A stretch of 63,871 nt of DNA, the filler included, from Octopus bimaculoides (lineage: Eukaryota): assembly GCF_001194135.2 (NCBI RefSeq). It is 6 parts of 5 records of this genome, joined end to end, with 100 filler letters (N's around TTAATTAATTAA, not from the genome) between each part and the next. Parts side by side here need not be neighbours in the genome. Positions count along the whole stretch, not along the records: positions 37,957 to 61,159 come from NC_069009.1; 5 more parts are not named here. One strand, 5' to 3'. The notes beneath the pieces were generated by a model, which saw nothing but the letters and a program-made list of their open reading frames with translations, was not told the DNA's origin and ran no database searches. Made by a program: the position numbers and the translations under genes. Positions 22,300-61,159 of this stretch are shown here, piece by piece (position 1 is the stretch's first letter; each line of letters starts with the position of its first letter).

Positions 22300-23789
22300 G
22301 TTATTATTATCATCATCATCATCATTATTATTATTATTATTATTATTATAGAGTGAGCGGACGTGTATACTTTTGCATCTGCAACGGGTTTCTTGGTTAC
22401 TGTGTTTCCGAGCTATGTTTTTTGTTTTTTTTTTCAGAAAATTCATTATATCTTTGGACCTCTTTGTATCGTTAAACGTATTTTACACAACGTCCTTAAT
22501 TATTGAATAAATTTATTTTAATGTAAAACGAGATATTTTTCGAATGTTTGGTATGTGTTTAAAAAATTGATAAAAGCACAGAATTTATGTGTTACACACC
22601 TGTCTAGAAGTTACTTCTATATTATATGGAACAAACAAATACGATAGCCGCATTGAAGTATGTAGGATAATAGTGGTATAACATGACCAAGTAATCAGCG
22701 TGAATGTGTCTTACGGTGATATAGATAATACNNNNNNNNNNNNNNNNNNNNNNNNNNNNNNNNNNNNNNNNNNNNNNNNNNNNNNNNNNNNNNNNNNNNN
22801 NNNNNNNNNNNNNNNNNNNNNNNNNNNNNNNNNNNNNNNNNNNNNNNNNNNNNNNNNNNNNNNNNNNNNNNNNNNNNNNNNNNNNNNNNNNNNNNNNNNN
22901 NNNNNNNNNNNNNNNNNNNNNNNNNNNNNNNNNNNNNNNNNNNNNNNNNNNNNNNNNNNNNNNNNNNNNNNNNNNNNNNNNNNNNNNNNNNNNNNNNNNN
23001 NNNNNNNNNNNNNNNNNNNNNNNNNNNNNNNNNNNNNNNNNNNNNNNNNNNNNNNNNNNNNNNNNNNNNNNNNNNNNNNNNNNNNNNNNNNNNNNNNNNN
23101 NNNNNNNNNNNNNNNNNNNNNNNNNNNNNNNNNNNNNNNNNNNNNNNNNNNNNNNNNNNNNNNNNNNNNNNNNNNNNNNNNNNNNNNNNNNNNNNNNNNN
23201 NNNNNNNNNNNNNNNNNNNNNNNNNNNNNNNNNNNNNNNNNNNNNNNNNNNNNNNNNNNNNNNNNNNNNNNNNNNNNNNNNNNNNNNNNNNNNNNNNNNN
23301 NNNNNNNNNNNNNNNNNNNNNNNNNNNNNNNNNNNNNNNNNNNNNNNNNNNNNNNNNNNNNNNNNNNNNNNNNNNNNNNNNNNNNNNNNNNNNNNNNNNN
23401 NNNNNNNNNNNNNNNNNNNNNNNNNNNNNNNNNNNNNNNNNNNNNNNNNNNNNNNNNNNNNNNNNNNNNNNNNNNNNNNNNNNNNNNNNNNNNNNNNNNN
23501 NNNNNNNNNNNNNNNNNNNNNNNNNNNNNNNNNNNNNNNNNNNNNNNNNNNNNNNNNNNNNNNNNNNNNNNNNNNNNNNNNNNNNNNNNNNNNNNNNNNN
23601 NNNNNNNNNNNNNNNNNNNNNNNNNNNNNNNNNNNNNNNNNNNNNNNNNNNNNNNNNNNNNNNNNNNNNNNNNNNNNNNNNNNNNNNNNNNNNNNNNNNN
23701 NNNNNNNNNNNNNNNNNNNATATATAATGTTATGAACAACGCACAGATTACTTTGGACACGATATGATATATATCCACCTTTGCTACTA

Positions 23790-48110: not shown

Positions 48111-50510
48111 CTTGTAGTTTCTATTAATCTATCAGCCTGAATGTTAAAATCTCACATTTTGTATTTTTTTATTTTCTAGCACTTTGCTAGATTCATGTTC
48201 ATACCACTTAGCAAATTCTAGCTATCTACATAACTTCCACTGGATTATTCTACCACGGTTATCACGAGTAACACTTTTCCCCTTTGATTTACGTAACCTA
48301 CATTGTCGTAAGCTTTTATCCCAATAGTCCTCAGGTTTTGTGCTACTACTAGCAACATTTCTGTTTCCCTTTTGCAACTACAACCATGTCTCACTATTAC
48401 TGTTTTCTTCCATTATCCGTGCAAAACCCTCTCTTGCCAGTCAGATAATTTTTCCCCCCAGCCTTTTAATCCCCTTTGCCTTTTGGTTTCGCTATCTCCT
48501 ACTATTACTCTTGCAGGTTTTTATAAAATTTCATCACTATTATCGGTGGTGCACCAGCATGACCGCAACCACTTGGCTGAAACACATAAATAAATAAATA
48601 AATAAATAAATAATCTACATAGGAGGCTACATTTACTCAAGCTAACATCTCACAGTCTTCTTCTTCTTCTTCTTCTTCTCAATTTTCTTCTTCTTTGTCT
48701 TTTGCTTATTGTTGTTATTGTTGCCATTAATCCACGTGGAGGCACGTGCGTAGTAGATAGGTTGTCGCACTCAAGATCTTAAGATTGTGGTTTCGCTTCC
48801 TGGACCGGGCGATGCATTGTGTTCTTTAGCAAAACACTTCATTTCACGTTGCTCCTGACCACTCAGGTGACAGAAATGAGTTATCCTGTGACGGACAGGT
48901 GTCCCATCCAGCTATGACTCGGGGAGTAACTTTGTTTCTTTGATCATTAATTTATGCATAACAGATTTATGTTTCCCTAGCAATATCACAAGGAGGTTGT
49001 TTAGTTCAGCTATACCTACTTATATTTTGACAAAATTAGAAAGAATTATTATTAGACATCACACATGACATCTAAGCTTGAAATATCGCTAGTGAGTTTT
49101 CTCTAAATTTACGTTCTTTATACTATTTCCGACAACTGAAATTATAACTTTTGTTCTGCGGATGCATCAAGGTTTCTGCTGAAGAAGATTTTCGGATCTT
49201 GTTCAAAACGGGGGCCACATTTTTCATTAATGTTTTACGTAGTGTTTTTGGTACCGAAAGACTTTCAAACTTCGTATACTTATCTATTTTGTGTTATAGA
49301 ACAGAAAAAAAAATTTGTATTCGGATTTATTTCATGTAAAAAATTGTCTTATTTCGATAATTTCAACCAATCACTGACAAGTATTCAGCTGTTTACATTT
49401 ACTCCTTTGGCTGATTAAGCGGTGTAAAGCGTATTTAATCTCCATTACTTCTGACATTTTGCAGAGGCAACACACGTGTGTTCGTTTTCCCTAACCCTAA
49501 CCCTAATTGACTTGCTNNNNNNNNNNNNNNNNNNNNNNNNNNNNNNNNNNNNNNNNNNNNNNNNNNNNNNNNNNNNNNNNNNNNNNNNNNNNNNNNNNNN
49601 NNNNNNNNNNNNNNNNNNNNNNNNNNNNNNNNNNNNNNNNNNNNNNNNNNNNNNNNNNNNNNNNNNNNNNNNNNNNNNNNNNNNNNNNNNNNNNNNNNNN
49701 NNNNNNNNNNNNNNNNNNNNNNNNNNNNNNNNNNNNNNNNNNNNNNNNNNNNNNNNNNNNNNNNNNNNNNNNNNNNNNNNNNNNNNNNNNNNNNNNNNNN
49801 NNNNNNNNNNNNNNNNNNNNNNNNNNNNNNNNNNNNNNNNNNNNNNNNNNNNNNNNNNNNNNNNNNNNNNNNNNNNNNNNNNNNNNNNNNNNNNNNNNNN
49901 NNNNNNNNNNNNNNNNNNNNNNNNNNNNNNNNNNNNNNNNNNNNNNNNNNNNNNNNNNNNNNNNNNNNNNNNNNNNNNNNNNNNNNNNNNNNNNNNNNNN
50001 NNNNNNNNNNNNNNNNNNNNNNNNNNNNNNNNNNNNNNNNNNNNNNNNNNNNNNNNNNNNNNNNNNNNNNNNNNNNNNNNNNNNNNNNNNNNNNNNNNNN
50101 NNNNNNNNNNNNNNNNNNNNNNNNNNNNNNNNNNNNNNNNNNNNNNNNNNNNNNNNNNNNNNNNNNNNNNNNNNNNNNNNNNNNNNNNNNNNNNNNNNNN
50201 NNNNNNNNNNNNNNNNNNNNNNNNNNNNNNNNNNNNNNNNNNNNNNNNNNNNNNNNNNNNNNNNNNNNNNNNNNNNNNNNNNNNNNNNNNNNNNNNNNNN
50301 NNNNNNNNNNNNNNNNNNNNNNNNNNNNNNNNNNNNNNNNNNNNNNNNNNNNNNNNNNNNNNNNNNNNNNNNNNNNNNNNNNNNNNNNNNNNNNNNNNNN
50401 NNNNNNNNNNNNNNNNNNNNNNNNNNNNNNNNNNNNNNNNNNNNNNNNNNNNNNNNNNNNNNNNNNNNNNNNNNNNNNNNNNNCACCACTACAACCACCA
50501 CCATCACCAC

Positions 50511-50638
50511 CGCCGTCGCCTCCGCCGTCGCCTCCGCCGTCGCCTCCGCCTCCGTCGCCTCCGCCTCCGTCGCCGTCGCCTCCGCCTCCGTCGCCGTCGC
50601 CTCCGCCGCCGCCTCCGCCGCCTCCTCCTCCGCCGCCG
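50511..50638. repeat. GC-rich (CGC/CTC/GTC)n microsatellite
   Basis: Read directly. The most GC/CpG-dense tract I noticed in the window. Confidence 0.9.
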
Positions 50639-50931
50639 GAGTGTGAGTGTGAGTGTGTGTGTATGCAAGAGTGATTGATGTTCAGTTTTTATTTGACGTT
50701 ACCACTAATTAAAGCTATAATCCATAATTACGTTCTCCACATTGAATTATCATTGAATTCAATTTTGTAAGTTTAAATATTAATCTAAAAGTAAAATAAA
50801 AGATTTATTCATCTCATGGAACAGGGGGGCAATGCTTGTCCTTTGAAGAATCCGCAATGGGAAAGAAATGAAATTGAACTTTCTGATATTTTGTATTTTC
50901 GTCTTTTACAGGTTAATCTACGCCTGAAAAT

Positions 50932-51116
50932 ATGTTTCATCAATTTAAATTGACTTTTGTGTTGATACTTTATATGAGATTATTTTTGGAGTCTCATGCT
51001 ACTACGTTAGACATTTGCTTAATATGCCGCTGTCAAAATGTTCGGACAAATATAGATTGTTCATATCACCAACTGAGTTTTATCCCACAACCTATTCCAC
51101 CGAATGTTGAATATCT
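50932..51116 (+). CDS. First coding exon of an extracellular LRR protein: signal peptide + LRRNT cap (MFHQFKLTFVLILYMRLFLESHATTLDICLICRCQNVRTNIDCSYHQLSFIPQPIPPNVEY-L)
   Basis: Acceptor ttttacag ends at 50911 and ATG is at 50932. Hydrophobic N-terminus followed by a CxxCxC-x8-C...LxxIP LRRNT pattern. Donor ct|gtaagt at 51116/51117 is phase 2, matching the downstream exons. Confidence 0.88.
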
Positions 51117-52134
51117 GTAAGTATTAGACAATTTCTATATATTTTCCGCATACGATGCTTTAAATTCTTGTTGTTTATGTTCTTAACTAATACCTTATGT
51201 TGTTGACCTGAGTTTTAAATTAAAACATGATGTTATGTTGGAGTAAAAAGGGCAAATAAGTTAACTGCCGTGAAGTCAAGTAGTCTGTTTTTTTTTTTCT
51301 GTAGATGTTGACTTATATGGAATATATAATTTACAATATTGCTCACAAAGCTGGGACGAGACCAATATTTGAACTTTGATGATGTTAGTTTATTACATTA
51401 AAACTCCTTATGATGATATTCAGGGAACGGAAAGAATGAAAACTGTTGGTATAAGCAAAACGTGTTGTATATATTGTTTTTTAAAATTAGTTTAAAATGT
51501 TTTTTATAGTTATTGCTGTATTGATATCACTTGGTGTACTCACAGAATGGTCGTTAACCATTGTGTGCATGCGTTATTTTTACTATTAAAATGTTAGCAT
51601 TAGACTAATTAAACTGCTGATAATAACGAGATCCGCTTAAATTGCCTGAATCTTAAATTACATAAATGAAACTCTTTATTTTTATTTGGGATGCAATTAG
51701 TAAAATTTAGGGTCATATCATAAGCACAGTACCTTTTTAAAAATAAACACACATTAATTCTAGAAAAGTTCTAGAAAATTATTTAAGCTCAATTGAAGTT
51801 TTAGATAATCGGTGTGTCCCAGTTCGACTGAAAAAATAACCTAGGTTGTAAAGAGTGTGTTCAACTCTCGCTGGGTATTATTTCAGATTAAATGATTTGC
51901 ATTGTTGCATTTATCATTTCAAACTTCCAATTTAAACCAATTATTCCAATACTATATTCGATCGATTCAATCGATTTCACCCACTTCTCTACATATGGTC
52001 TGAGAAAACAGAAATCCGTATATCTGCAGATGGTGAAAATACGATATGTATTATTTAGTAATTTTAATTTTTCATAATCTAATTCATAATTTAGTAGAAA
52101 ATTGGCCGCACCTGCAGACCGTCGAGTGGAATGA

Positions 52135-52610
52135 CACCTTCATCATCATCATCATCATCATCATCGTTTAACGTCCGCTTTCCATGCTAGCATGGGTTGG
52201 ACGATTTGACTGAGGACTGGTGATACCGGATGGCAACACCAGGCTCCAATCTAATTTGGCAGAGTTTCTACAGCTGGATGCCCTTCCTAACGCCAACCAC
52301 TCAGAGAGTGTAGTGGGTGTTTTTACGTGTCACCCGCACGAAAACGGCCACGCTCGAAATGGTGTCTTTTATGTGCCACTCGCACAAGAGCCAGTCCAGG
52401 GGCACTGGCAACGATCTCACTCGAAAATCCTACGGGAGCCAGTCAGGCGGTACTGGCAACGGCCACGCTCAAAATGGTGCATCTCATGTGCCACCCGCAC
52501 AAGAGCCAGTCCAGGGGCACTGGCAACGATCTTACTTGGCTTGCCGGGTCTTCTCACGCACAGCACATTTCCAAAGGTTGTGGTATTTAATCTGGCACTG
52601 GGTGTTCTGA
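52135..52610 (-). mobile_element. Family D (RTE-tail) element with internal tandem duplication
   Basis: (CAT)n-gtttaacgtccgctttccatgc...; cgcacaagagccagtccaggggcactggcaacgatct occurs twice. Confidence 0.75.
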
Positions 52611-52770
52611 CTTAAAATCTCTCCGAGGTCATCTTAACTTTACAGACTTTCCAGTACCAAACCAGACCAGTGGACTAGACGGAGTGAAGAGATGTAGGAC
52701 TGGGTGTCTTGTGGTATTTTTCTGGCTCTTTGCACTTTAAGTTCAAATCCCACTCAATTTTATGTTCCAG

Positions 52771-52842
52771 GGATTTCAAAGGTAACAATATCGAAGAAAT
52801 CAAAGTACAAACCTTCCGGAATTTGTCCAACTTAAAAAGTCT
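52771..52842 (+). CDS. LRR exon (DFKGNNIEEIKVQTFRNLSNLKS-L)
   Basis: tttatgttccag acceptor, 72 bp open in phase 2, gtaagttg donor, typical 24-aa LRR consensus. Confidence 0.92.
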
Positions 52843-53069
52843 GTAAGTTGAATCAGTTTTCTTTTATGGTATTTCATTGACGATACATTTCTAAATCTGT
52901 AGTGTTTTCCCATATTTCATTTTAAGCTCCCTCACCCGTCTTCCCAAAGATGTGTTTCATTGTTTTTGAATGCGTAAACGTGAGTGTGGTCCCATTTCAG
53001 AGACTTGGGACTTGGAACATACCAGAGCGTGATACTCAAGAGGAAACATTTAGTATATGCACATTTTGA

Positions 53070-53102
<33 letters not shown>

Positions 53103-53421
53103 CTTCGTTACAATATCATAAATCAGGAGAAGAGCATACCCTATAAAATATAGAGAACAGTTACTGTTTAGAGAAACTGAAGAGATGTCTAGTTCACGCT
53201 AGATATGAAACCAATATTTCTTTTCTAAACTTTCGTTATACATACACAAATATATATATATAAGGGATCAGCAAATTGCTTCACCAACATACCGAAAATT
53301 TAGAAATAGCAGTTAAAATACTAATTCTACTACTACAATATATCTCCAACAGATAGCGATATTCGTGACTCACGTAGGCAAAAGAAGAAAAATAACGAAA
53401 CAAACCTGTCGTTAGTTAATG

Positions 53422-53476
53422 ATGGACGCGTTTCGGGATTAGAATTATGTAAAAATTCAATTCCACTCCTCAGCAT
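53422..53476 (-). ncRNA. Minimal type I hammerhead ribozyme-like motif (Penelope pLTR-type remnant)
   Basis: Minus strand reads atg-CTGAGGA-gtggaattgaatt...aattctaatccc-GAAA-CGCG-TC-cat: core boxes, imperfect stem II, palindromic stem III, GUC site, 3-bp stem I. Confidence 0.55.
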
Positions 53477-54664
53477 AACCACTGAGCCACGCACCTTCAC
53501 TCTCTTCACCGTAGAAGAAAGGAGTGAAGCGATAGAGACAGAGAAAGGAAAGCCTCAGTTATTTACAATGACAATTAAATGGAAATACAATCTATTTTTT
53601 CTAGCTTCTTTACCTTTAACAATGACGAAGAGGGAAAGATATTTAGTAATGAATAGAGGGAAAATCTTTCAGGTGTTTACGTTTTATTCTGGGAGTTCTA
53701 GAACGATCGACTGTTAGTTCTTTCTTCTTTCCCCTACCCTTGGTACTTATTCACCTTCTTTCATAGTTCTTCGTGTCTTTTAACTGGGGGGAAAGACCAT
53801 GTACTTTTTTTTTTCAGGCACGTTTAGCGTTTTCTCTACAAACTACAAACAATCCTCCACCTTTTCTTTTCTTTTTTTTTTCATATAAAAACTAATGCAA
53901 AATTCGAACAGTGTATAGGCGGGAAAAGAGCCCAGAAAAAGGAGTAATACCTCCTATAAAATGGGGCTACACAAAATTCAACTCTATAATTTAAAGCAGT
54001 ATTTATCAACCTTTTTACCTTTGCATAACTCTCAAAATAAATTATGTGTCTCAAGGAACACCTGTACANNNNNNNNNNNNNNNNNNNNNNNNNNNNNNNN
54101 NNNNNNNNNNNNNNNNNNNNNNNNNNNNNNNNNNNNNNNNNNNNNNNNNNNNNNNNNNNNNNNNNNNNNNNNNNNNNNNNNNNNNNNNNNNNNNNNNNNN
54201 NNNNNNNNNNNNNNNNNNNNNNNNNNNNNNNNNNNNNNNNNNNNNNNNNNNNNNNNNNNNNNNNNNNNNNNNNNNNNNNNNNNNNNNNNNNNNNNNNNNN
54301 NNNNNNNNNNNNNNNNNNNNNNNNNNNNNNNNNNNNNNNNNNNNNNNNNNNNNNNNNNNNNNNNNNNNNNNNNNNNNNNNNNNNNNNNNNNNNNNNNNNN
54401 NNNNNNNNNNNNNNNNNNNNNNNNNNNNNNNNNNNNNNNNNNNNNNNNNNNNNNNNNNNNNNNNNNNNNNNNNNNNNNNNNNNNNNNNNNNNNNNNNNNN
54501 NNNNNNNNNNNNNNNNNNNNNNNNNNNNNNNNNNNNNNNNNNNNNNNNNNNNNNNNNNNNNNNNNNNNNAAGTTGAAATATTCTTATTTATAGTATTTCA
54601 TTGACATTATATTTCTAAATCTGTAATGTCTTCCCATACTTCATTTTAAGCTCCATCACCAGTC

Positions 54665-54950
54665 TTAACCTCATCAATCTTTTAGAGAAACGTTGTCATC
54701 TGTTGGCATTGATACATCAATTAGAAAGTATTTTTGTCTTCATGATCTCTGACAACTATGTCTGGCCTATTGGCCTTAATTTCTTTGTGTGTGTATTGGC
54801 ATATCCCAGAATATGGTTGCTTTCTCGTTTTCTGTGACCTTTTCTGGCGTGTGCTTATACCATCTTTTTTTCTGTTATTATTCCATAGTGTTGGCATAGC
54901 TTCAGTGTATGCAGGTCCCAACTCTTTGAATATATTCCTTCTTAGCCAGG
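54665..54950 (-). mobile_element. RLE endonuclease fragment inserted in an LRR intron
   Basis: HKEIKANRPDIVVRDHEDK...LIDVSMP (PD..D motif). Confidence 0.75.
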
Positions 54951-55649
54951 ACTTAGAAACACCTATATTTCCAAAGGTGAATTATCCAAACACCAAAGAA
55001 TTCCTCTTAACACATGGCTATGATTCTCCCCAACTACTTCTGCTTGTGATCAGAGATGCACATATTGTCAACCACTAAGGGACAGGCTCAACTGGTTAAG
55101 GTCAAACAACTGACATGCAAATCTGTGGTATTGAGCAGAATATTTACTGTAGCCCGTCTTTTCTACCAAAACAAAACAATGCTTTTTTTCTTTTTATTCT
55201 TTCCGTTGTTTCAAATTTAACATAACTTTTCCACCACTGTTTTATATTTTCAATTCTTCATGATCAGTCTCATCTTATTCATCACCACCATCAACAATAT
55301 TATCAACTTCATAAACATTTGCACCAACTACATCACCGTCATAATTAGTGTCATCAGTTTAGTTATCATCATCTTCACCAGAAACATTACCAGCAACATT
55401 CATCAACAAAATTATCGTCAGAATCACCGTAATTATCCTCATCAACTTCATTGTCACAACCATCACCATCACACCAACATTATCTTCATCAACCTTACCA
55501 CCATCCTTCCGTCCTACGTCTCATCGTTATATTTATCACTCCCACCACCTCCACTCTCCTCATCCTCTTACTCCTCCTCACTATTATCATCGCCATTACT
55601 TACTTTATTTTTCTTCCAGCAAGTATTTGTTTCGCCATTTTATGTTAGT

Positions 55650-56037
55650 GGAGGCCATTTATTTTATGTTAGTGGTTAGGGCAGCGGACTCACGGTCATA
55701 GGATCGCGGTTTTGATTCCCAAACCGGGCGTTGTGAGTGTATATTGAGTGAAAACAACTAAAGTTCCACGAGGCTCCGGCAGGGGATGGTGGCGAACCCT
55801 GCTGTACTCTTCCACCACAACTTTCTCTCACTCTTACTTCCTGTTTCTGTTGTGCCTGTAATTCAAAGGGGCCAGCCTTGTCACACTCTGTGTCACTCTG
55901 AATATCCCCGAGAACTACGTTAAGGGTACACGTGTCTGTGGAGTGCTCAGCCACTTGCACGTTAATTTCACGAGCAGGCTGTTCCGTTGATCGGATCAAC
56001 TGGAAACCTCGACGTCGTAAGTGACGGAGTGCCAATA
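55650..56037 (+). mobile_element. SINE family B copy ending about 60 bp upstream of an LRR acceptor
   Basis: Matches 26495-26872. attttatgtta on both sides is a possible TSD. Confidence 0.85.
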
Positions 56038-56098
56038 AATATTTTATGTTATACAACTCTTGTACTTTCTCCTAAAAACTAATTTTTTTATATTACAG

Positions 56099-56170
56099 AT
56101 ATTTACAATACAATAAGATCGAAAAAATAGAAGTAAGAGCCTTCGATGAACTGCCCAGTTTGAGAACACT
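56099..56170 (+). CDS. LRR exon (YLQYNKIEKIEVRAFDELPSLRT-L), non-cassette flanks
   Basis: ttttttatattacag acceptor, 72 bp, gtaagttag donor, LRR consensus. Confidence 0.9.
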
Positions 56171-56339
56171 GTAAGTTAGAGAAATCTTGTTGATAAATTA
56201 CTAAATATTTAAAATCTTTCATGGAATTATTCATCATCGCGATCTACTTTCCATCCCTTCCATCGTAGAATTGTTTAGCCAAAATTCTGTCACAAATATA
56301 TTCTATATAATTCCTTCTTTACTCAATTTTATGTTGCAG

Positions 56340-56411
56340 ATTTTTAACTGGTAATAAAATCAAGGAAATCAATGCGGACACATTCCGAAATCTGTTCAGT
56401 TTAGCATATAT
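56340..56411 (+). CDS. LRR exon (FLTGNKIKEINADTFRNLFSLAY-I)
   Basis: ttttatgttgcag acceptor, 72 bp, gtaagttg donor. Confidence 0.92.
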
Positions 56412-56739
56412 GTAAGTTGAATCAGTTTGTTTTTAAATAGTATTTCATTGACGATATTTCTAAATCTGTAATCCATTTTCATCCTTCATTTTCAGTTCCC
56501 TCACTCGTTTTTCCAAAGATAAGTTATATTGCTTGTGAATCTGTGTATATGAGTGAGAGCCCATTTCTTAAATATCGGATTTATAAGGGCGTGATACTTC
56601 ATGTATATATATGTTTCTGTATATGTGTAAAATCTGTCTCTGTTCAAAATCTGTGAATGTCAGTGAATGTGAGTAAGGGACCATTCCTTAGATCTGGAAT
56701 ATGAGTGTGTGACAATTAAGGGGAAAAAATTAGTGCAAA

Positions 56740-56993
56740 CAGGTCTAGTAGTGCTTTTGGTAGGGTTCATAGGTGTCTGGGGAAACAAATTAAAGTTAAG
56801 GTATATAATACATGCGTCCTCCCATCTTTGCTCTATGGAAGTGAGGCATGTGTCGTGTACCGTAGGCAGGTAAGGCAATTGGAACGATTTCATCAATACT
56901 GTCTGAGAAAAATTGGGGGGATAAACTGGAAAAGGGCTATTAGTAATGTGGAAGTGCTTAAGAGGAGTGACAGTAGCAATATAGTGTCAATGA
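56740..56993 (+). mobile_element. RTE (BovB-like) LINE fragment inside an LRR cassette intron
   Basis: KVYNTCVLPSLLYGSEA...LERFHQYCLRKI.GINW...SNVEVL. Confidence 0.85.
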
Positions 56994-57090
56994 TCTACTT
57001 TCTATCCCTTCTATCATCTAATAATTTATCAAAACGTCTGTCATAAATATGTTCTATACAATTCCTTCTTAAATCAATTTTATGTTCCAG

Positions 57091-57162
57091 ATACTTGAAT
57101 TATAATGACATCAGAGAAGTCAAAGCCGATACCTTCCAAAATCTGTCCAGTTTAACATATAT
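57091..57162 (+). CDS. LRR exon (YLNYNDIREVKADTFQNLSSLTY-I)
   Basis: ttttatgttccag acceptor, 72 bp, gtaagttg donor. Confidence 0.92.
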
Positions 57163-57359
57163 GTAAGTTGAATCAGTCTTCTTTTACAGTATTTCAGTGA
57201 CGAAATTGTGTACAATCTATCTCCGTCCAATGTGTAAAATCTATGTCTGTCCAAAGTTTATTCATGTCTGTGAATGAGTGAGGGTACATTCCTTATATTT
57301 GGAAAATATGAGTGTGTGACAATGAAGAAGAAAAATTAGTGCATACATGTTTATGTATA

Positions 57360-57405
<46 letters not shown>

Positions 57406-57832
57406 TTTGTGTGAGTCTGTTTGTGTATGGATGTGTGCATGCGAGTGTATCAAAATGTATATGTAATTCGGTCTGTATATCATGTGCGGTGTTTACGCCT
57501 CCATCACCACTGATTACCATCCTAACCTCTTCTTCTTCTTCTTCTTCTTCCCCGTATTCTTTTCTACTTCTTTTTCTTCTTTTCCTTCGTTTTCTCTTCA
57601 TCTTTTTCTTCTTCTACTCCTCCCGTTCTTCCACCTTCTATTCTTCTTGTTCTTGTTCTTTTTTCTTTTTCTACTCTTACCTCTCTTCTTCCACCTCTTC
57701 TTCTTCGTTTTCTTCTTCTTCTCCTCATTCTTTGCCCTCTTTTTCTTATTCTGACTTTGACCTTTTCTTTCACAATTCCTTCATATTTCCAATGGGAATT
57801 CATTCACAGAGATATGAGTATTTAAGGCGGCG

Positions 57833-58580
57833 AGCTGGCAGAAACGATAGCACGCCTTTCATCCTTTCAGGGTCGATTAAATAAGTACCAGTTACGTACT
57901 GGGGTCGATGTAATCGACTTAATCCGTTTGTCTGTCCTTGTTTGTCCCCTCTATGTTTAGCCCCTTGTGGGCAATAAAGAAATAGGTAATTCGTCTGCCG
58001 CTACGTTCTGAGTTCAAATTCCGCCGAGGTCAACTTTGCCTTTCATCCTTTCGGGGTCGATTAAATAAGTACCAGTTACATACTGGGGTCAATANNNNNN
58101 NNNNNNNNNNNNNNNNNNNNNNNNNNNNNNNNNNNNNNNNNNNNNNNNNNNNNNNNNNNNNNNNNNNNNNNNNNNNNNNNNNNNNNNNNNNNNNNNNNNN
58201 NNNNNNNNNNNNNNNNNNNNNNNNNNNNNNNNNNNNNNNNNNNNNNNNNNNNNNNNNNNNNNNNNNCGCCTTTCATCCTTTCAGGGTCGATTAAATAAGT
58301 ACCAGTTACGTACTGGGGTCGATGTAATCGACTTAATCCGTTTGTCTGTCCTTGTTTGTCCCCTCTATGTTTAGCCCCTTGTGGGCAATAAAGAAATAGG
58401 TAATTCGTCTGCCGCTACGTTCTGAGTTCAAATTCCGCCGAGGTCAACTTTGCCTTTCATCCTTTCGGGGTCGATTAAATAAGTACCAGTTACATACTGG
58501 GGTCAATATAATCGAATTAATCCATTTGTCCTTCTTTGTCCGCTCTGTGTGTAGCTCCTTGTGGGTAGTAAAGAAATAAG
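57833..58580 (+). mobile_element. SINE family C sequence repeated around an N-gap
   Basis: Essentially identical units at 57857-58094 and 58267-58510. Confidence 0.75.
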
Positions 58581-58685
58581 GAGCTATGAGTATCTTTGTG
58601 TGTAGAGCAGCCCCCATAATTTGTAGATATACATGTACTACTCTCTCAGCCTCTCTCTCAATTTTTCTCTCTCTTTCTTTGTATA

Positions 58686-58784
58686 TACTTTCCTTCTCAT
58701 TTTCCTACTTTCCTTCTCATTTTCCTACTTTCCTTCTCATTTTCCTACTTTCCTTCTCATTTTCCTACTTTCCTTCTCATTTTC
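58686..58784. repeat. 20-bp minisatellite (tactttccttctcattttcc), about 5 units
   Basis: Read directly. Confidence 0.85.
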
Positions 58785-59408
58785 TTTGTTAAATTTCTCA
58801 ATCATGAACATCGTCAAGTTCATCATCGTCTGCTTCGTCATTAACATCATACATTACCACAAAATACCATCATCAGATGCAGAAACTTCAACACTTTTAT
58901 CATCATCTCCAACAGTAACATCCCCACCAACATTATCACAATCAATATCATATTCAGCATCACCATAGACACGCTAATCCCCATTATCATCAGAATAATC
59001 AACATTAACAACATCAGCCACAACAACAGCATCATAACATCATCGTCATCAGCACTGCCAGCATATATTCTTCTCTGTCTCATCATCATATTCATCACTA
59101 CCACCACCACCACCACCACAACGTTCGCTACCAACTCTACCACCATTATTTTATTATCCTACTCAACCTTATCAACATCATCGTCATCAACATCATCATC
59201 GTCATAAACATCATCGTCATCAACGTCATCATCTTCGCCATCTTCTTCATTGAATTAACCATCAACGTGATCTATTTTCCATCCCTTCCATCATAGAATT
59301 GTTTAGCCGAAATTTTGTCCCATCTCTTCCATGATAGAATTGTTTAGCCGAAATTTTGTCACAAATATATTCTATACAAATCCTTTTTAACTCAATTTTA
59401 TGTTTCAG

Positions 59409-59480
59409 ATCTTTGAGTTCTAATAAAATCCAGGAAATCAAGGCAGACACCTTCCGAAATGTGACCAGTTTAACATTTAT
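59409..59480 (+). CDS. LRR exon (SLSSNKIQEIKADTFRNVTSLTF-I)
   Basis: ttttatgtttcag acceptor, 72 bp, gtaagttg donor. Confidence 0.92.
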
Positions 59481-59740
59481 GTAAGTTGAATCATTCTTCT
59501 TTTATAGTATTTCGTTAACAAATATATTTCTAAATCTGTAATATCTTCTCATCGTTAGTTTATGCTCCCTCACCCGTCTTTGTGAATCTCTGTGTGTCAG
59601 TGTGTGCCCATTTCTTGGATATGGCATGTATGAGATCGTGTAAAATCTGTCTCTGATCAAAGCCTGTGAATGTGAGAGAGTCTCCATTCCTCACAAATAT
59701 GGTCTATACAATTCCTTCTTAACTCAATTTTATGTTCCAG

Positions 59741-59812
59741 AGATTTGAGTGATAATAATATCACGGAAATCAAAGCCGACACCTTCCGAAATCTGTCCAG
59801 TTTGACACATCT
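59741..59812 (+). CDS. LRR exon (DLSDNNITEIKADTFRNLSSLTH-L)
   Basis: ttttatgttccag acceptor, 72 bp, gtaagtta donor. Confidence 0.92.
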
Positions 59813-60163
59813 GTAAGTTAAATCAGTCTTTTTTATTGTATTTCATTGAAGGTGTATTTTTTAAACTGTAATATATTTTCATCCTTCATCTTAAGTTACC
59901 TCAGCCGTCTTTCCAAAAATGAGTTTTATTGGTTGTGAATCTGTGTGCGTGAGTGTGTGTCCATTTCATACACATAAGCTATATGAGAATGGGATACTTC
60001 AGTGGAACCATTTAGCGTGTGGAACCATTTATGTGTATGTCTCAGTGTATGTATAGAAACTGTCTCTGTCCAAAACGTGTGTTAGTGTTCATGAATGTTT
60101 AGTAAAAATTCTGTCACAAATATATTCTGTACAATTTCATCTGAACTCAATTTTATGTTCCAG

Positions 60164-60235
60164 ATATTTGAGGACTAATGGTATCATGGAAATCAAATCA
60201 GACACATTCCGAAATCTGTTCAATTTAAGAGAACT
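60164..60235 (+). CDS. LRR exon (YLRTNGIMEIKSDTFRNLFNLRE-L)
   Basis: ttttatgttccag acceptor, 72 bp, gtaagttg donor. Confidence 0.92.
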
Positions 60236-60720
60236 GTAAGTTGAATCAGTCTTCTTTGATAGTATTTTATTGATGATATATTTCTAAATCTGTGATACCT
60301 TCTCATCCTTCTTTTTAAGCTCCCTTACCTGTCTTTCCAAAGATGTGTTTTACTGGTTATGAATCTGTGTGTGTGTGAGTGTGTGCCTATTTCTGAGTGC
60401 GGATCACTGGGCATTCATGTGGATATGAGTATATTTGTGTGTGTATCAGCACTTATAATTTATATATATATTTGTGTGCCTCTCTCTCTATCTATCTGAC
60501 CCTCTCCCCTTCTCTCTCTCTCTCTCTTTCTTTCTCTCTCTCTCTGATTATATATATACATATATTCTTGTTTGTGTGTGTGCACGCGCGTGTAAATAGC
60601 AGTGATAATTATCAGCCATGTGTTCTACTTTCCATTCCTTCCACTATCGAATTGTTTAGCCAACATTCTGTCACAGATATATTCTATACAATTCCTTCTT
60701 AACTCAATTTTATGTTTCAG

Positions 60721-60792
60721 ATATTTAAGTTCTAATAAAATCAAGGAAATCGAAGCAGACACCTTCCGTAATCTTTCCAGTTTGAGACATCT
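60721..60792 (+). CDS. LRR exon (YLSSNKIKEIEADTFRNLSSLRH-L), last one visible
   Basis: ttttatgtttcag acceptor, 72 bp, gtaagttg donor. The end of ORF 60602-60796 shows the same peptide. Confidence 0.92.
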
Positions 60793-61124
60793 GTAAGTTG
60801 AATCATTATTTTTTTATAGTATTTCGTTCACGATGTATTTCTAAATCTGTAATACCTTCCCATCCTTCATTTTCTGCTTCCTCACCCCGTCTTTCCAAAG
60901 ATGCGTTTTATTGGTTGTGAATCTGAGTGTGTGAGTATGTGCCAATTTCTTACACATGGGATGTATGAGAACGTGATAGTTCAGGGGAACTGTCGTGTGT
61001 AAGTGTGGATTAATGTAACATCACGGGAATTTGAGTATGTATTGGTGCGTATCAGCCCTCATAATTTGTACATATATATGTATACCACTCTCTCTGCTTC
61101 CCTCTCAATCTCTCTCTCCCTCTT

Positions 61125-61159
<35 letters not shown>

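What the first reader, a model, noticed from the sequence alone, without database searches (positions are those of the whole stretch)
50912..61120. Secreted/receptor LRR gene built from a recently amplified one-exon-one-LRR cassette
Seen: eight 72-bp exons, all phase 2 to phase 2, splice in frame after the signal/LRRNT exon, and every junction codon is Leu or Ile. Seven share clearly homologous flanking intron sequence, including the ttcttaactcaattttatgtt(c/t/g)cag acceptor region and the gtaagttgaatc donor, so exon and intron were duplicated together recently. Established: 72-bp single-LRR exons occur in LGR/RXFP and Slit genes, but their introns are not normally recognisably homologous. Inference: this is a young, copy-number-plastic LRR array, prone to unequal crossover, in which any exon can be skipped without a frameshift. 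It is a candidate variable recognition receptor (immune, symbiont or chemosensory) in a cephalopod.
Basis: partly seen in the sequence, partly recalled or inferred. Interest (0 to 1): 0.8.

Follow-up and report, generated by a model that had tools for sequence, protein, structure and literature searches.

The report
Octopus adhesion-GPCR leucine-rich-repeat exon array
This is the front end of a large Octopus bimaculoides cell-surface receptor gene (an adhesion GPCR of a known octopus-specific expansion), whose ligand-binding leucine-rich-repeat domain grew by repeated duplication of a one-exon-plus-intron unit; the exons are spliced constitutively in RNA.

Summary
Exon 1 (ATG 50932 to 51116) is followed by eight 72-nt phase-2 exons with Leu/Ile junction codons, and seven share homologous intron flanks.

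RNA adds three points.
- Gap 54069-54569 hides one more 72-nt LRR exon.
- Gap 58095-58266 hides none and looks like an unmerged contig overlap.
- The transcript continues beyond the piece (E10, E11, E12 and further sequence).

The window is Octopus bimaculoides CM046629.1. About 20 kb downstream on the same strand lie more LRR exons, then LRRCT, a Cys-rich domain, GAIN/GPS and 7TM. Paralogues with the same signal/LRRNT exon are LRR adhesion GPCRs. The array is therefore most likely the ectodomain of an adhesion GPCR from the known octopus-specific expansion. It is neither a secreted protein nor an LGR.

"Recent" is relative. Copies differ by about 15% per lineage at neutral sites. Splice-proximal intron is constrained (1-5%). 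Concave-face codons diverge twice as fast as neutral sites (30%).

Raw RNA-seq shows in-order, constitutive splicing, with no skipping among 400-630 reads per junction. Repeat number differs between paralogues, and O. sinensis annotations list isoforms differing by 24-residue units. My verdict is a new member of a known kind, of moderate interest.

The parts
50909..51116 (+). First coding exon: 23 nt of 5'UTR, then ATG at 50932, a signal peptide, an LRRNT cap (CxxCxCx8C) and the start of LRR1. A short 5'UTR exon spliced onto 50909 lies outside the readable window.
   Evidence: RNA contigs start at 50909, preceded by 27-68 nt that are not in the window. 626 raw reads join 51116 to 52771.
52771..52842 (+). 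LRR exon E2 (72 nt, phase 2-2). It shares the cassette donor flank and about 25 nt of the acceptor flank.
54069..54569 (+). Assembly gap hiding one 72-nt LRR exon. It begins AGATTTGGAAAGTAATAGTGTCAAAGAAAT and ends CTTCCAGAATCTATCTAGTTTGGAAACACT, which translates as DLESNSVKEI....FQNLSSLET.
   Evidence: The RNA contig has 72 nt between E2 and E3.
54570..54666 (+). Downstream intron flank of the hidden exon. It starts at base 3 of the cassette donor and is homologous to the other cassette flanks.
   Evidence: family D4.
56099..56170 (+). LRR exon E3, an older repeat type without the shared flanks. It resembles exon S3 of the O. sinensis gene.
56340..56411 (+). LRR exon E4 (young cassette type).
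   Evidence: 436 raw reads join E3 to E4.
57091..57162 (+). LRR exon E5 (young cassette type). Its unit is stretched by microsatellite and SINE insertions up to about 58687.
   Evidence: 497 raw reads join E4 to E5.
58095..58266 (.). Assembly gap in intron E5-E6. It holds no exon and is flanked by identical 242-nt copies, so it is probably an unmerged overlap.
   Evidence: family D5.
59409..59480 (+). LRR exon E6 (young cassette type).
   Evidence: 507 raw reads join E6 to E7.
59741..59812 (+). LRR exon E7 (young cassette type).
   Evidence: 401 raw reads join E7 to E8.
60164..60235 (+). LRR exon E8 (young cassette type).
60721..60792 (+). LRR exon E9 (young cassette type). The transcript continues past the end of the piece into E10, E11 (E7-like, 8 mismatches in 70) and E12.
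60653..61132 (+). Example of one complete duplication unit: about 70-100 nt of upstream intron, the exon, and about 340 nt of downstream intron. The same unit recurs at 52703, 56272, 57023, 59341, 59673 and 60096.
   Evidence: (families D1, D3, D4, D6, D7).

Best explanation
The region is the 5' part of one large Octopus bimaculoides gene for an LRR-bearing adhesion GPCR. This family is the octopus-specific class-B expansion, which NCBI names variously LRRC4-like or ADGRG6-like.

Exon 1 encodes the signal peptide and LRRNT cap. Each following 72-nt phase-2 exon encodes one 24-residue LRR. All exons are spliced constitutively, in genomic order, into a long solenoid with at least 11 repeats shown by RNA. 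Downstream come LRRCT, a Cys-rich domain, GAIN/GPS and 7TM.

The array grew by unequal crossing-over that duplicated whole exon-plus-intron units of about 330-560 bp. After duplication three rate classes appear:
- Distal intron and third codon positions drifted neutrally.
- The branch-point/polypyrimidine/acceptor stretch (-40..-1), the donor (+1..+12) and the structural LRR residues were held by purifying selection.
- The solvent-exposed concave-face residues changed about twice as fast as neutral sites, which suggests selection for altered ligand binding.

Shown here: exon structure, splicing, flank homology, rate classes, the family's architecture, and same-strand downstream GAIN/GPS/7TM exons. 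Inferred: that the array and the 7TM part are one transcript, unequal crossing-over as the duplication mechanism, and ligand-driven selection.
For: Exon structure and junction codons.

LRR identity. The PDB hits are generic typical-LRR ectodomains.

RNA: contigs in X3, X12, X14, X18, X19 and X20 join 5'UTR, exon 1, E2, the hidden exon and E3 through E11 in order. The 1676-nt contig runs 607 nt beyond E11. Raw reads (X32) give 626, 436, 497, 507 and 401 reads on successive junctions, with introns near zero depth.

Locus identity: O. bimaculoides CM046629.1 at 4.067 Mb.

Family by the N-terminal exon: P0059, P0062, P0070, P0073 and P0077 carry LRR plus LRRCT plus HRM, GPS and 7tm_2.

Downstream on the same strand: three more 72-nt LRR exons, a last LRR, LRRCT (the P0106 model starts inside it), Cys-rich exons, GAIN, a canonical GPS (CSCDHLTSFALLM), TM1 and TM2. 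There is no LRRNT exon in that stretch.

Literature: PMC6408891 describes the octopus-specific adhesion-GPCR group, with LRR in 5 of 22 members.

Rate classes, as difference from the cassette consensus:
- Concave codon positions 1+2: 0.30.
- Distal intron: 0.156.
- Other third codon positions: 0.146.
- Other codon positions 1+2: 0.047.
- Intron -40..-1: 0.054.
- Intron +1..+12: 0.014.
Concave positions against distal intron give an odds ratio of 2.3, p = 0.002. Pooled dN/dS is 2.6 at the concave positions and 0.19 elsewhere.

The same cassette flanks occur in an O. sinensis gene. The acceptor flank is at about 24 times baseline depth in genomic contigs.
Against: - No RNA record was seen that physically links the LRR exons to the GAIN/7TM exons.
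- About 7.8 kb between the two loci, plus several gaps including a 1480-nt gap right after the piece, were not read. They could hold a stop, a LRRCT or another start.
- The current annotation treats the region as four separate short genes.
- The selection test rests on only 6 exons and 7 codons. It assumes a star phylogeny, and the concave positions were assigned from the LRR template, not from a structure.
- Gene conversion among cassettes could mimic some of the rate differences.
Confidence: 0.78

Rival explanations
1. An independent gene for a secreted or membrane-anchored LRR-only protein (LRRC4-like, as annotated) that merely lies upstream of a separate adhesion-GPCR gene.
For: NCBI models call it LRRC4-like and stop early. 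About 7.8 kb plus gaps between the array and the LRRCT exon were not seen. No RNA link to the 7TM part was obtained.
Against: The short models end at gaps or contig ends, not at real stops. The downstream model P0106 begins inside a LRRCT without a signal peptide or LRRNT. LRR exons with the related acceptor continue right up to it. Every long paralogue with this N-terminal exon is LRR plus GAIN/GPS/7TM. The RNA runs at least 607 nt past E11.
Confidence: 0.12
2. A splicing-diversified receptor: the symmetric LRR exons are alternatively skipped or swapped to give many ectodomain isoforms from one gene.
For: All exons are phase 2-2, so any subset stays in frame. O. sinensis RefSeq lists isoforms of two family members that differ by exact 24-residue units or by swapped units: 157 against 133 aa, and 525, 501 and 477 aa.
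Against: In this gene, raw RNA-seq shows only in-order junctions, with 400-630 reads each and a listing threshold of 3 reads. There is no E3-E5, E6-E8 or E2-E3 joint. Contigs from at least 7 other runs in several studies carry the same single order. The O. sinensis isoforms are computed models and could come from reads mis-placed among near-identical exons.
Confidence: 0.07
3. The flank similarity and the repeated exons are an assembly artefact, such as collapsed or duplicated haplotigs in a gappy scaffold.
For: The piece has many gaps. One gap is flanked by identical 242-nt copies.
Against: The exons differ from one another by 15-29%. All appear once each, in order, in spliced RNA. Genomic contigs from the 2015 run cover 59295-60400 with 0 mismatches at single-copy depth.
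Confidence: 0.02

Closest known systems
Octopus-specific adhesion-GPCR expansion (group 3 of Ritschard et al. 2019, PMC6408891)
   Same: Same species. Class-B adhesion GPCRs with GPS and 7TM, and LRR domains in some members. The paper reports tandem co-localisation, branch-level positive selection, and expression in axial nerve cord, suckers and skin. Paralogues sharing this gene's N-terminal exon have exactly that architecture.
   Different: The paper worked on 7TM-containing gene models and did not describe the LRR exon structure, cassette duplication or site-specific divergence. This gene's LRR part is annotated separately from its 7TM part, so it was probably not analysed as an LRR-bearing member. 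Whether this very gene is in their list was not checked.
Vertebrate ADGRA2/ADGRA3 (GPR124/GPR125), LRR-containing adhesion GPCRs
   Same: N-terminal LRR domain with LRRCT, followed by HRM, GAIN/GPS and 7TM. Paralogues hit Pfam GAIN_ADGRA3.
   Different: ADGRA proteins have about 4 LRRs and an Ig domain (from my own knowledge, not tested here). Here there are at least 11 LRRs, probably about 20. No Ig hit was found. A Cys-rich domain ending in CCxxxLCN, which I read by eye as resembling Ly6/uPAR, and a SEA-like stretch are present instead. Orthology was not tested.
LGR4/5/6, glycoprotein-hormone and relaxin receptors (class-A LRR GPCRs), and Slit
   Same: The LGR4/5 ectodomains are among the best PDB matches.
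   Different: The downstream transmembrane part here is 7tm_2 with GAIN/GPS, not a rhodopsin-type 7TM. The PDB similarity is generic to typical LRRs: IGFALS and TLR3 score higher.
Lamprey variable lymphocyte receptors
   Same: LRR modules of 24 residues with variation concentrated on the concave face. The locus is modular.
   Different: VLR diversity is made somatically by copying flanking cassettes into an incomplete gene. Here the cassettes are ordinary GT-AG exons, all included in the mRNA.

Membership tests
Typical extracellular LRR domain with LRRNT cap | Tandem 24-residue LxxLxLxxNxL repeats matching LRR profiles | tested here: met
   LRR_8 at E = 1.5e-51, with 4 stretches. All 8 exons carry xLxxNxIxxI....F..L..L.
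Typical extracellular LRR domain with LRRNT cap | Signal peptide followed by a four-cysteine LRRNT | tested here: inconclusive
   A C29-x2-C32-x-C34-x8-C43 pattern follows a hydrophobic N-terminus. Pfam LRRNT scored below cut-off in the paralogues where it appeared (25.2 bits against 25.8 in P0062). No signal-peptide predictor was available.
Adhesion GPCR (class B2) | GAIN domain with GPS motif next to the 7TM | tested here: met
   Downstream on the same strand of CM046629.1. GAIN exons are at L003 16507-21161. GPS CVYWDES...CSCDHLTSFALLM is at 22897-23076. The called gene there has a Pfam GPS hit.
Adhesion GPCR (class B2) | Secretin-type 7TM (7tm_2) | tested here: met
   TM1 and TM2 exons are at L003 24500-24589 and 27051-27155. 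7tm_2 is a weak hit for the called gene, which is cut by the locus end. 7tm_2 scores 4.8e-10 in paralogue P0059.
Adhesion GPCR (class B2) | LRR array and 7TM part belong to one transcript and protein | tested here: inconclusive
   Same strand, about 20 kb apart. LRR exons continue up to the LRRCT exon, with no LRRNT exon between. Paralogues have the joined architecture.
LGR / glycoprotein-hormone receptor family (class A) | Rhodopsin-type 7TM after the LRR ectodomain and hinge | tested here: not met
   The downstream exons are GAIN/GPS/7tm_2. The only O. bimaculoides LGR4-named hit is 42% identical and lies on another chromosome-sized record.
Alternatively spliced cassette-exon array (Dscam-like or skipping-based diversity) | Transcripts that omit or choose among the repeated exons | tested here: not met
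   In X32, 401-626 reads support each in-order junction and no skipping joint reached 3 reads. Contigs of at least 7 runs show a single order. Only about 6% of one raw run and assembler contigs were examined, so rare or tissue-specific events are not excluded.
Somatically assembled LRR receptor (VLR-like) | Incomplete germline gene plus non-spliced donor cassettes | tested here: not met
   Every cassette has AG/GTAAGT sites and is present in the mRNA in germline order.

The most novel reading that the evidence does not exclude
The octopus LRR adhesion GPCRs could form a rapidly evolving recognition repertoire. Lineage-specific gain and loss of one-LRR cassettes, accelerated change of concave-face residues and, in some members, alternative inclusion of LRR exons (as the O. 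sinensis isoform models suggest) would together tune ligand specificity. The ligands could serve contact chemosensation, self/non-self recognition or neuronal recognition in arms, suckers and skin. That would make the family a cell-surface diversity system parallel to the octopus protocadherin expansion.
Probability: 0.12. Interest if true: 0.75.

Novelty: new member of a known kind. Interest (0 to 1): 0.42.

Why it matters
The result has three practical consequences.

- **Annotation.** At least four RefSeq models are probably fragments of one receptor gene of 47 kb or more. These are XP_014782915.2, a 181-aa model, LOC106878254 and a GPS/7tm_2 model. Counts and domain tables of the octopus adhesion-GPCR expansion (LRR seen in only 5 of 22 members) are therefore likely to under-report LRR ectodomains.

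- **Exon duplication.** The locus is a clean natural example of tandem exon-plus-intron duplication. Neutral intron sequence, constrained splice-proximal intron and fast-evolving ligand-facing codons can be compared side by side within a single locus.

- **Experiments.** If the ectodomains are under diversifying selection, they are the obvious place to look for ligands of an expanded, highly expressed receptor family whose function is unknown.

Tried and rejected
I used repeat-free sub-ranges instead.
- P0002 and P0077 are not on record for context look-up.
- The 5'UTR exon, the hidden exon and the E12 start were searched for in the window and in all fetched loci. None was found.
- The first protein search with the whole spliced product returned mostly generic LRR proteins and two truncated O. 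sinensis models. Searching with exon 1 alone is what revealed the family.
- From contig tables I first read E11 as identical to E7. A later run showed 8 mismatches in 70, so that claim is withdrawn.
- Two literature searches for a described octopus LRR exon-cassette system found nothing beyond PMC6408891. Passages in PMC9815951 and PMC10138644 were not relevant.
- No tRNA-like genes were detected in the intronic SINE-like repeats.
- A high-copy transposon origin for the flanks is rejected. Genomic depth is at single-copy baseline away from the splice-proximal parts.
- LGR, Slit and VLR membership were rejected (see the membership tests).

Full report
**1. The observation**

No other exon of this LRR type is found on the plus strand. 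They lie at 52771-52842, 56099-56170, 56340-56411, 57091-57162, 59409-59480, 59741-59812, 60164-60235 and 60721-60792.

Splicing them after the first coding exon (ATG 50932 to 51116, 185 nt) gives an open 253-residue product. Every intron is AG...GTAAGT and phase 2. The junction codons are L, L, L, I, I, I, L, L. The product matches LRR_8 at E = 1.5e-51. Its N-terminus is a hydrophobic leader followed by CxxCxCx8C, which is the pattern of an LRRNT cap.

Seven exons share intron flanks.
- The acceptor motif occurs 7 times against 0.05 expected.
- The donor motif occurs 7 times against 1.3 expected.
- The repeat finder independently reports 7 copies of a 234-nt unit, plus further families that extend the unit to about 100 nt upstream and 340 nt or more downstream of the exon.
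- The exon at 56099 lacks these flanks.

**2. The gaps**

Gap 54069-54569 hides one exon.
- The sequence after the gap begins at base 3 of the cassette donor and continues with the cassette's downstream flank.
- RNA contigs place exactly 72 nt between E2 and E3.
- 419 raw reads run from the end of E2 into AGATTTGGAAAGTAATAGTGTCAAAGAAAT with agreement 1.0.
- The hidden exon ends CTTCCAGAATCTATCTAGTTTGGAAACACT. It reads DLESNSVKEI....FQNLSSLET.

Gap 58095-58266 sits in the E5-E6 intron. It is bracketed by two 242-nt copies that are 100% identical (family D5), which is the signature of an unmerged contig overlap. RNA joins E5 directly to E6.

**3. Transcription and splicing**

Spliced contigs in at least seven runs from several studies carry this order: a short 5'UTR exon (not in the window), then 50909-51116, E2, the hidden exon, and E3 to E9. 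They then carry E10 and an E7-like E11 that lie beyond the piece. The longest contig (1676 nt) continues 607 nt past E11. E12 starts AATTTGAGCGGTAATGATATC.

In about 6% of a 2026 raw-read RNA run (X32), exon depth is 300-1100 and intron depth about 0-10. The in-order junctions are supported as follows.

| Junction | Reads |
|---|---|
| Exon 1 to E2 | 626 |
| E3 to E4 | 436 |
| E4 to E5 | 497 |
| E5 to E6 | about 410 |
| E6 to E7 | 507 |
| E7 to E8 | 401 |

No exon-skipping joint reached the listing threshold of 3 reads. So in this gene the exons are constitutive, within the limits of the sampling.

**4. What the gene is**

The window is Octopus bimaculoides GCA_001194135.2, CM046629.1, with exon 1 at about 4,067,340 and the same gaps. 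RefSeq splits the region into an 86-aa model (XP_014782915.2, LRRC4-like) and a 181-aa model.

A search of 1.8 billion representatives with exon 1 alone found a family sharing this signal/LRRNT exon at 46-70% identity. Its long members (O. vulgaris and O. sinensis ADGRG6-like, LRRC15-like and so on) read, in order:
- signal and LRRNT;
- 3 to 12 LRRs;
- LRRCT;
- a Cys-rich domain ending CCxxxLCN;
- a SEA-like stretch;
- HRM;
- GAIN/GPS;
- 7tm_2.

About 20 kb downstream of E9 on the same strand, locus L003 contains the following:
- three more 72-nt LRR exons with a related acceptor (tatcaactcaattttatgtttacag);
- a last LRR (...YEDGAFLFLPS...);
- a LRRCT exon, inside which the model LOC106878254 (P0106) begins;
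- Cys-rich exons;
- GAIN exons;
- a canonical GPS (CSCDHLTSFALLM);
- TM1 and TM2.

No LRRNT exon lies in that stretch. The simplest reading is one gene of 47 kb or more. This matches the octopus-specific adhesion-GPCR expansion of Ritschard et al. 2019 (PMC6408891).

The link is inferred from collinearity and from the family's architecture. About 7.8 kb and several gaps were also not read.

**5. How the array evolved**

The six closest cassettes (E4 to E9) are 71-85% identical in the exon. Measured as difference from the cassette consensus, the sites fall into three classes.

| Site class | Difference from consensus | Reading |
|---|---|---|
| Distal intron | 0.154-0.156 | Neutral |
| Third positions of non-concave codons | 0.146 | Neutral |
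| Intron -40..-1 | 0.054 | Constrained |
| Intron +1..+12 | 0.014 | Constrained |
| Positions 1+2 of structural codons | 0.047 | Constrained |
| Positions 1+2 of the seven concave x codons of LxxLxLxxNxLx | 0.298 | Accelerated |

Concave positions against distal intron give an odds ratio of 2.3, p = 0.002. Pooled Nei-Gojobori dN/dS is 2.6 at the concave codons and 0.19 elsewhere.

The flank homology therefore has two causes: shared descent, which is now 15% diverged per copy, and purifying selection on the splice signals.

An O. sinensis gene (L001) carries the same flanks. Its exon S4 is about as close to E4-E9 as they are to each other. A different cassette type (S2, S5, S6; 83-90% identical, with differences clustered in the first 13 nt) has multiplied there. 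Genomic contigs show the acceptor flank at about 24 times baseline depth, while the mid-intron is single copy.

This shows repeated, lineage-specific cassette duplication over evolutionary time. It does not show one very recent burst. The caveats are that the sample is small, the copies are treated as independent, and gene conversion was not modelled.

**6. Comparison and verdict**

The domain works like any typical-LRR ectodomain. The best PDB matches are IGFALS, TLR3, LRRC15, LGR4/5 and LRIG1.

It is not an LGR, because the downstream part is 7tm_2 with GAIN/GPS. It is not VLR-like, because the cassettes are ordinary exons that are all included.

Alternative use of LRR exons is not seen in this gene. 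It is, however, suggested for paralogues by RefSeq isoforms that differ by exact 24-residue units. That remains a lead to be checked against uniquely mapping reads.

Overall the feature is real and well-supported. Its interpretation is corrected from a young secreted variable receptor to the constitutive LRR ectodomain of a mis-annotated adhesion GPCR from a known octopus expansion, with evidence of cassette turnover and accelerated change on the binding face.

Noticed in passing
window 57091-57162 and 59409-59480 (RNA run X32): A few reads join the end of E5 to the start of E5 (5 reads, about 1%) and the end of E6 to the start of E6 (11 reads, about 2%). The likely cause is RT/PCR chimeras between neighbouring exons whose 3' ends differ by one base. 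Exon repetition, tiny circular RNAs, or a rare cassette duplication in a pooled sample are not excluded.
   Followed up: partly
window 57853-58094 and 58267-58508: Two 242-nt copies, 100% identical, lie on either side of the 172-N gap. This is probably an unmerged contig overlap, so the gap and one copy may not exist.
   Followed up: partly
window 51035; 59780; 59788: Variants appear in raw RNA reads. 51035 A>G is seen in 59% of reads and changes Gln35 to Arg in the LRRNT. 59788 G>A is seen in 20% of reads and changes Arg to Gln in E7. 59780 C>T is seen in 16% of reads and is synonymous. They may be alleles or a very close extra copy.
   Followed up: no
CM046629.1 about 4.067-4.114 Mb (L002, L003): Four RefSeq models look like fragments of one gene broken at assembly gaps. 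They are an 86-aa model, a 181-aa model, the 286-aa LOC106878254 that starts inside a LRRCT, and a 182-aa GPS/7tm_2 model.
   Followed up: partly
Proteins P0073, P0115-P0119, P0001 and P0058 (O. sinensis): RefSeq isoforms of two family members differ by exact 24-residue LRR units or by swapped units (525, 501 and 477 aa; 157 and 133 aa). This suggests alternative LRR-exon use in paralogues, or mis-mapped reads.
   Followed up: partly
L003 11906-13895; paralogues P0067, P0070, P0072, P0073: A Cys-rich domain of about 90 residues lies between LRRCT and the SEA-like/GAIN region and ends in CCxGxLCNxND. By eye it resembles a Ly6/uPAR three-finger domain. Pfam gave no hit.
   Followed up: no
window 52120-52620: A SINE-like repeat in intron 1 has an internal 79-nt duplication. 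It is extremely abundant in RNA contigs, with word depth up to about 7e5. Related repeats lie at 55650-56030 (also present twice in L003 3246-3884) and at 57815-58590. ARAGORN finds no tRNA-like gene.
   Followed up: partly
window 37958-38819: ORFs here show reverse-transcriptase motifs (HGFRPGRSC..., YLDFAKAFDKVDH). This is a LINE remnant at the start of the piece. Nothing else gene-like was found upstream of exon 1.
   Followed up: no
window 50510-50638: A GC-rich (CCGCCG)n-type tandem array lies directly after the 967-N gap, about 300 bp upstream of the first coding exon. The true 5'UTR exon and promoter are not in the readable window.
   Followed up: no
window 59279-59360: A 41-nt tandem duplication (95% identical) lies inside the upstream flank of E6. 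It is a small-scale example of continuing duplication within the cassette.
   Followed up: no
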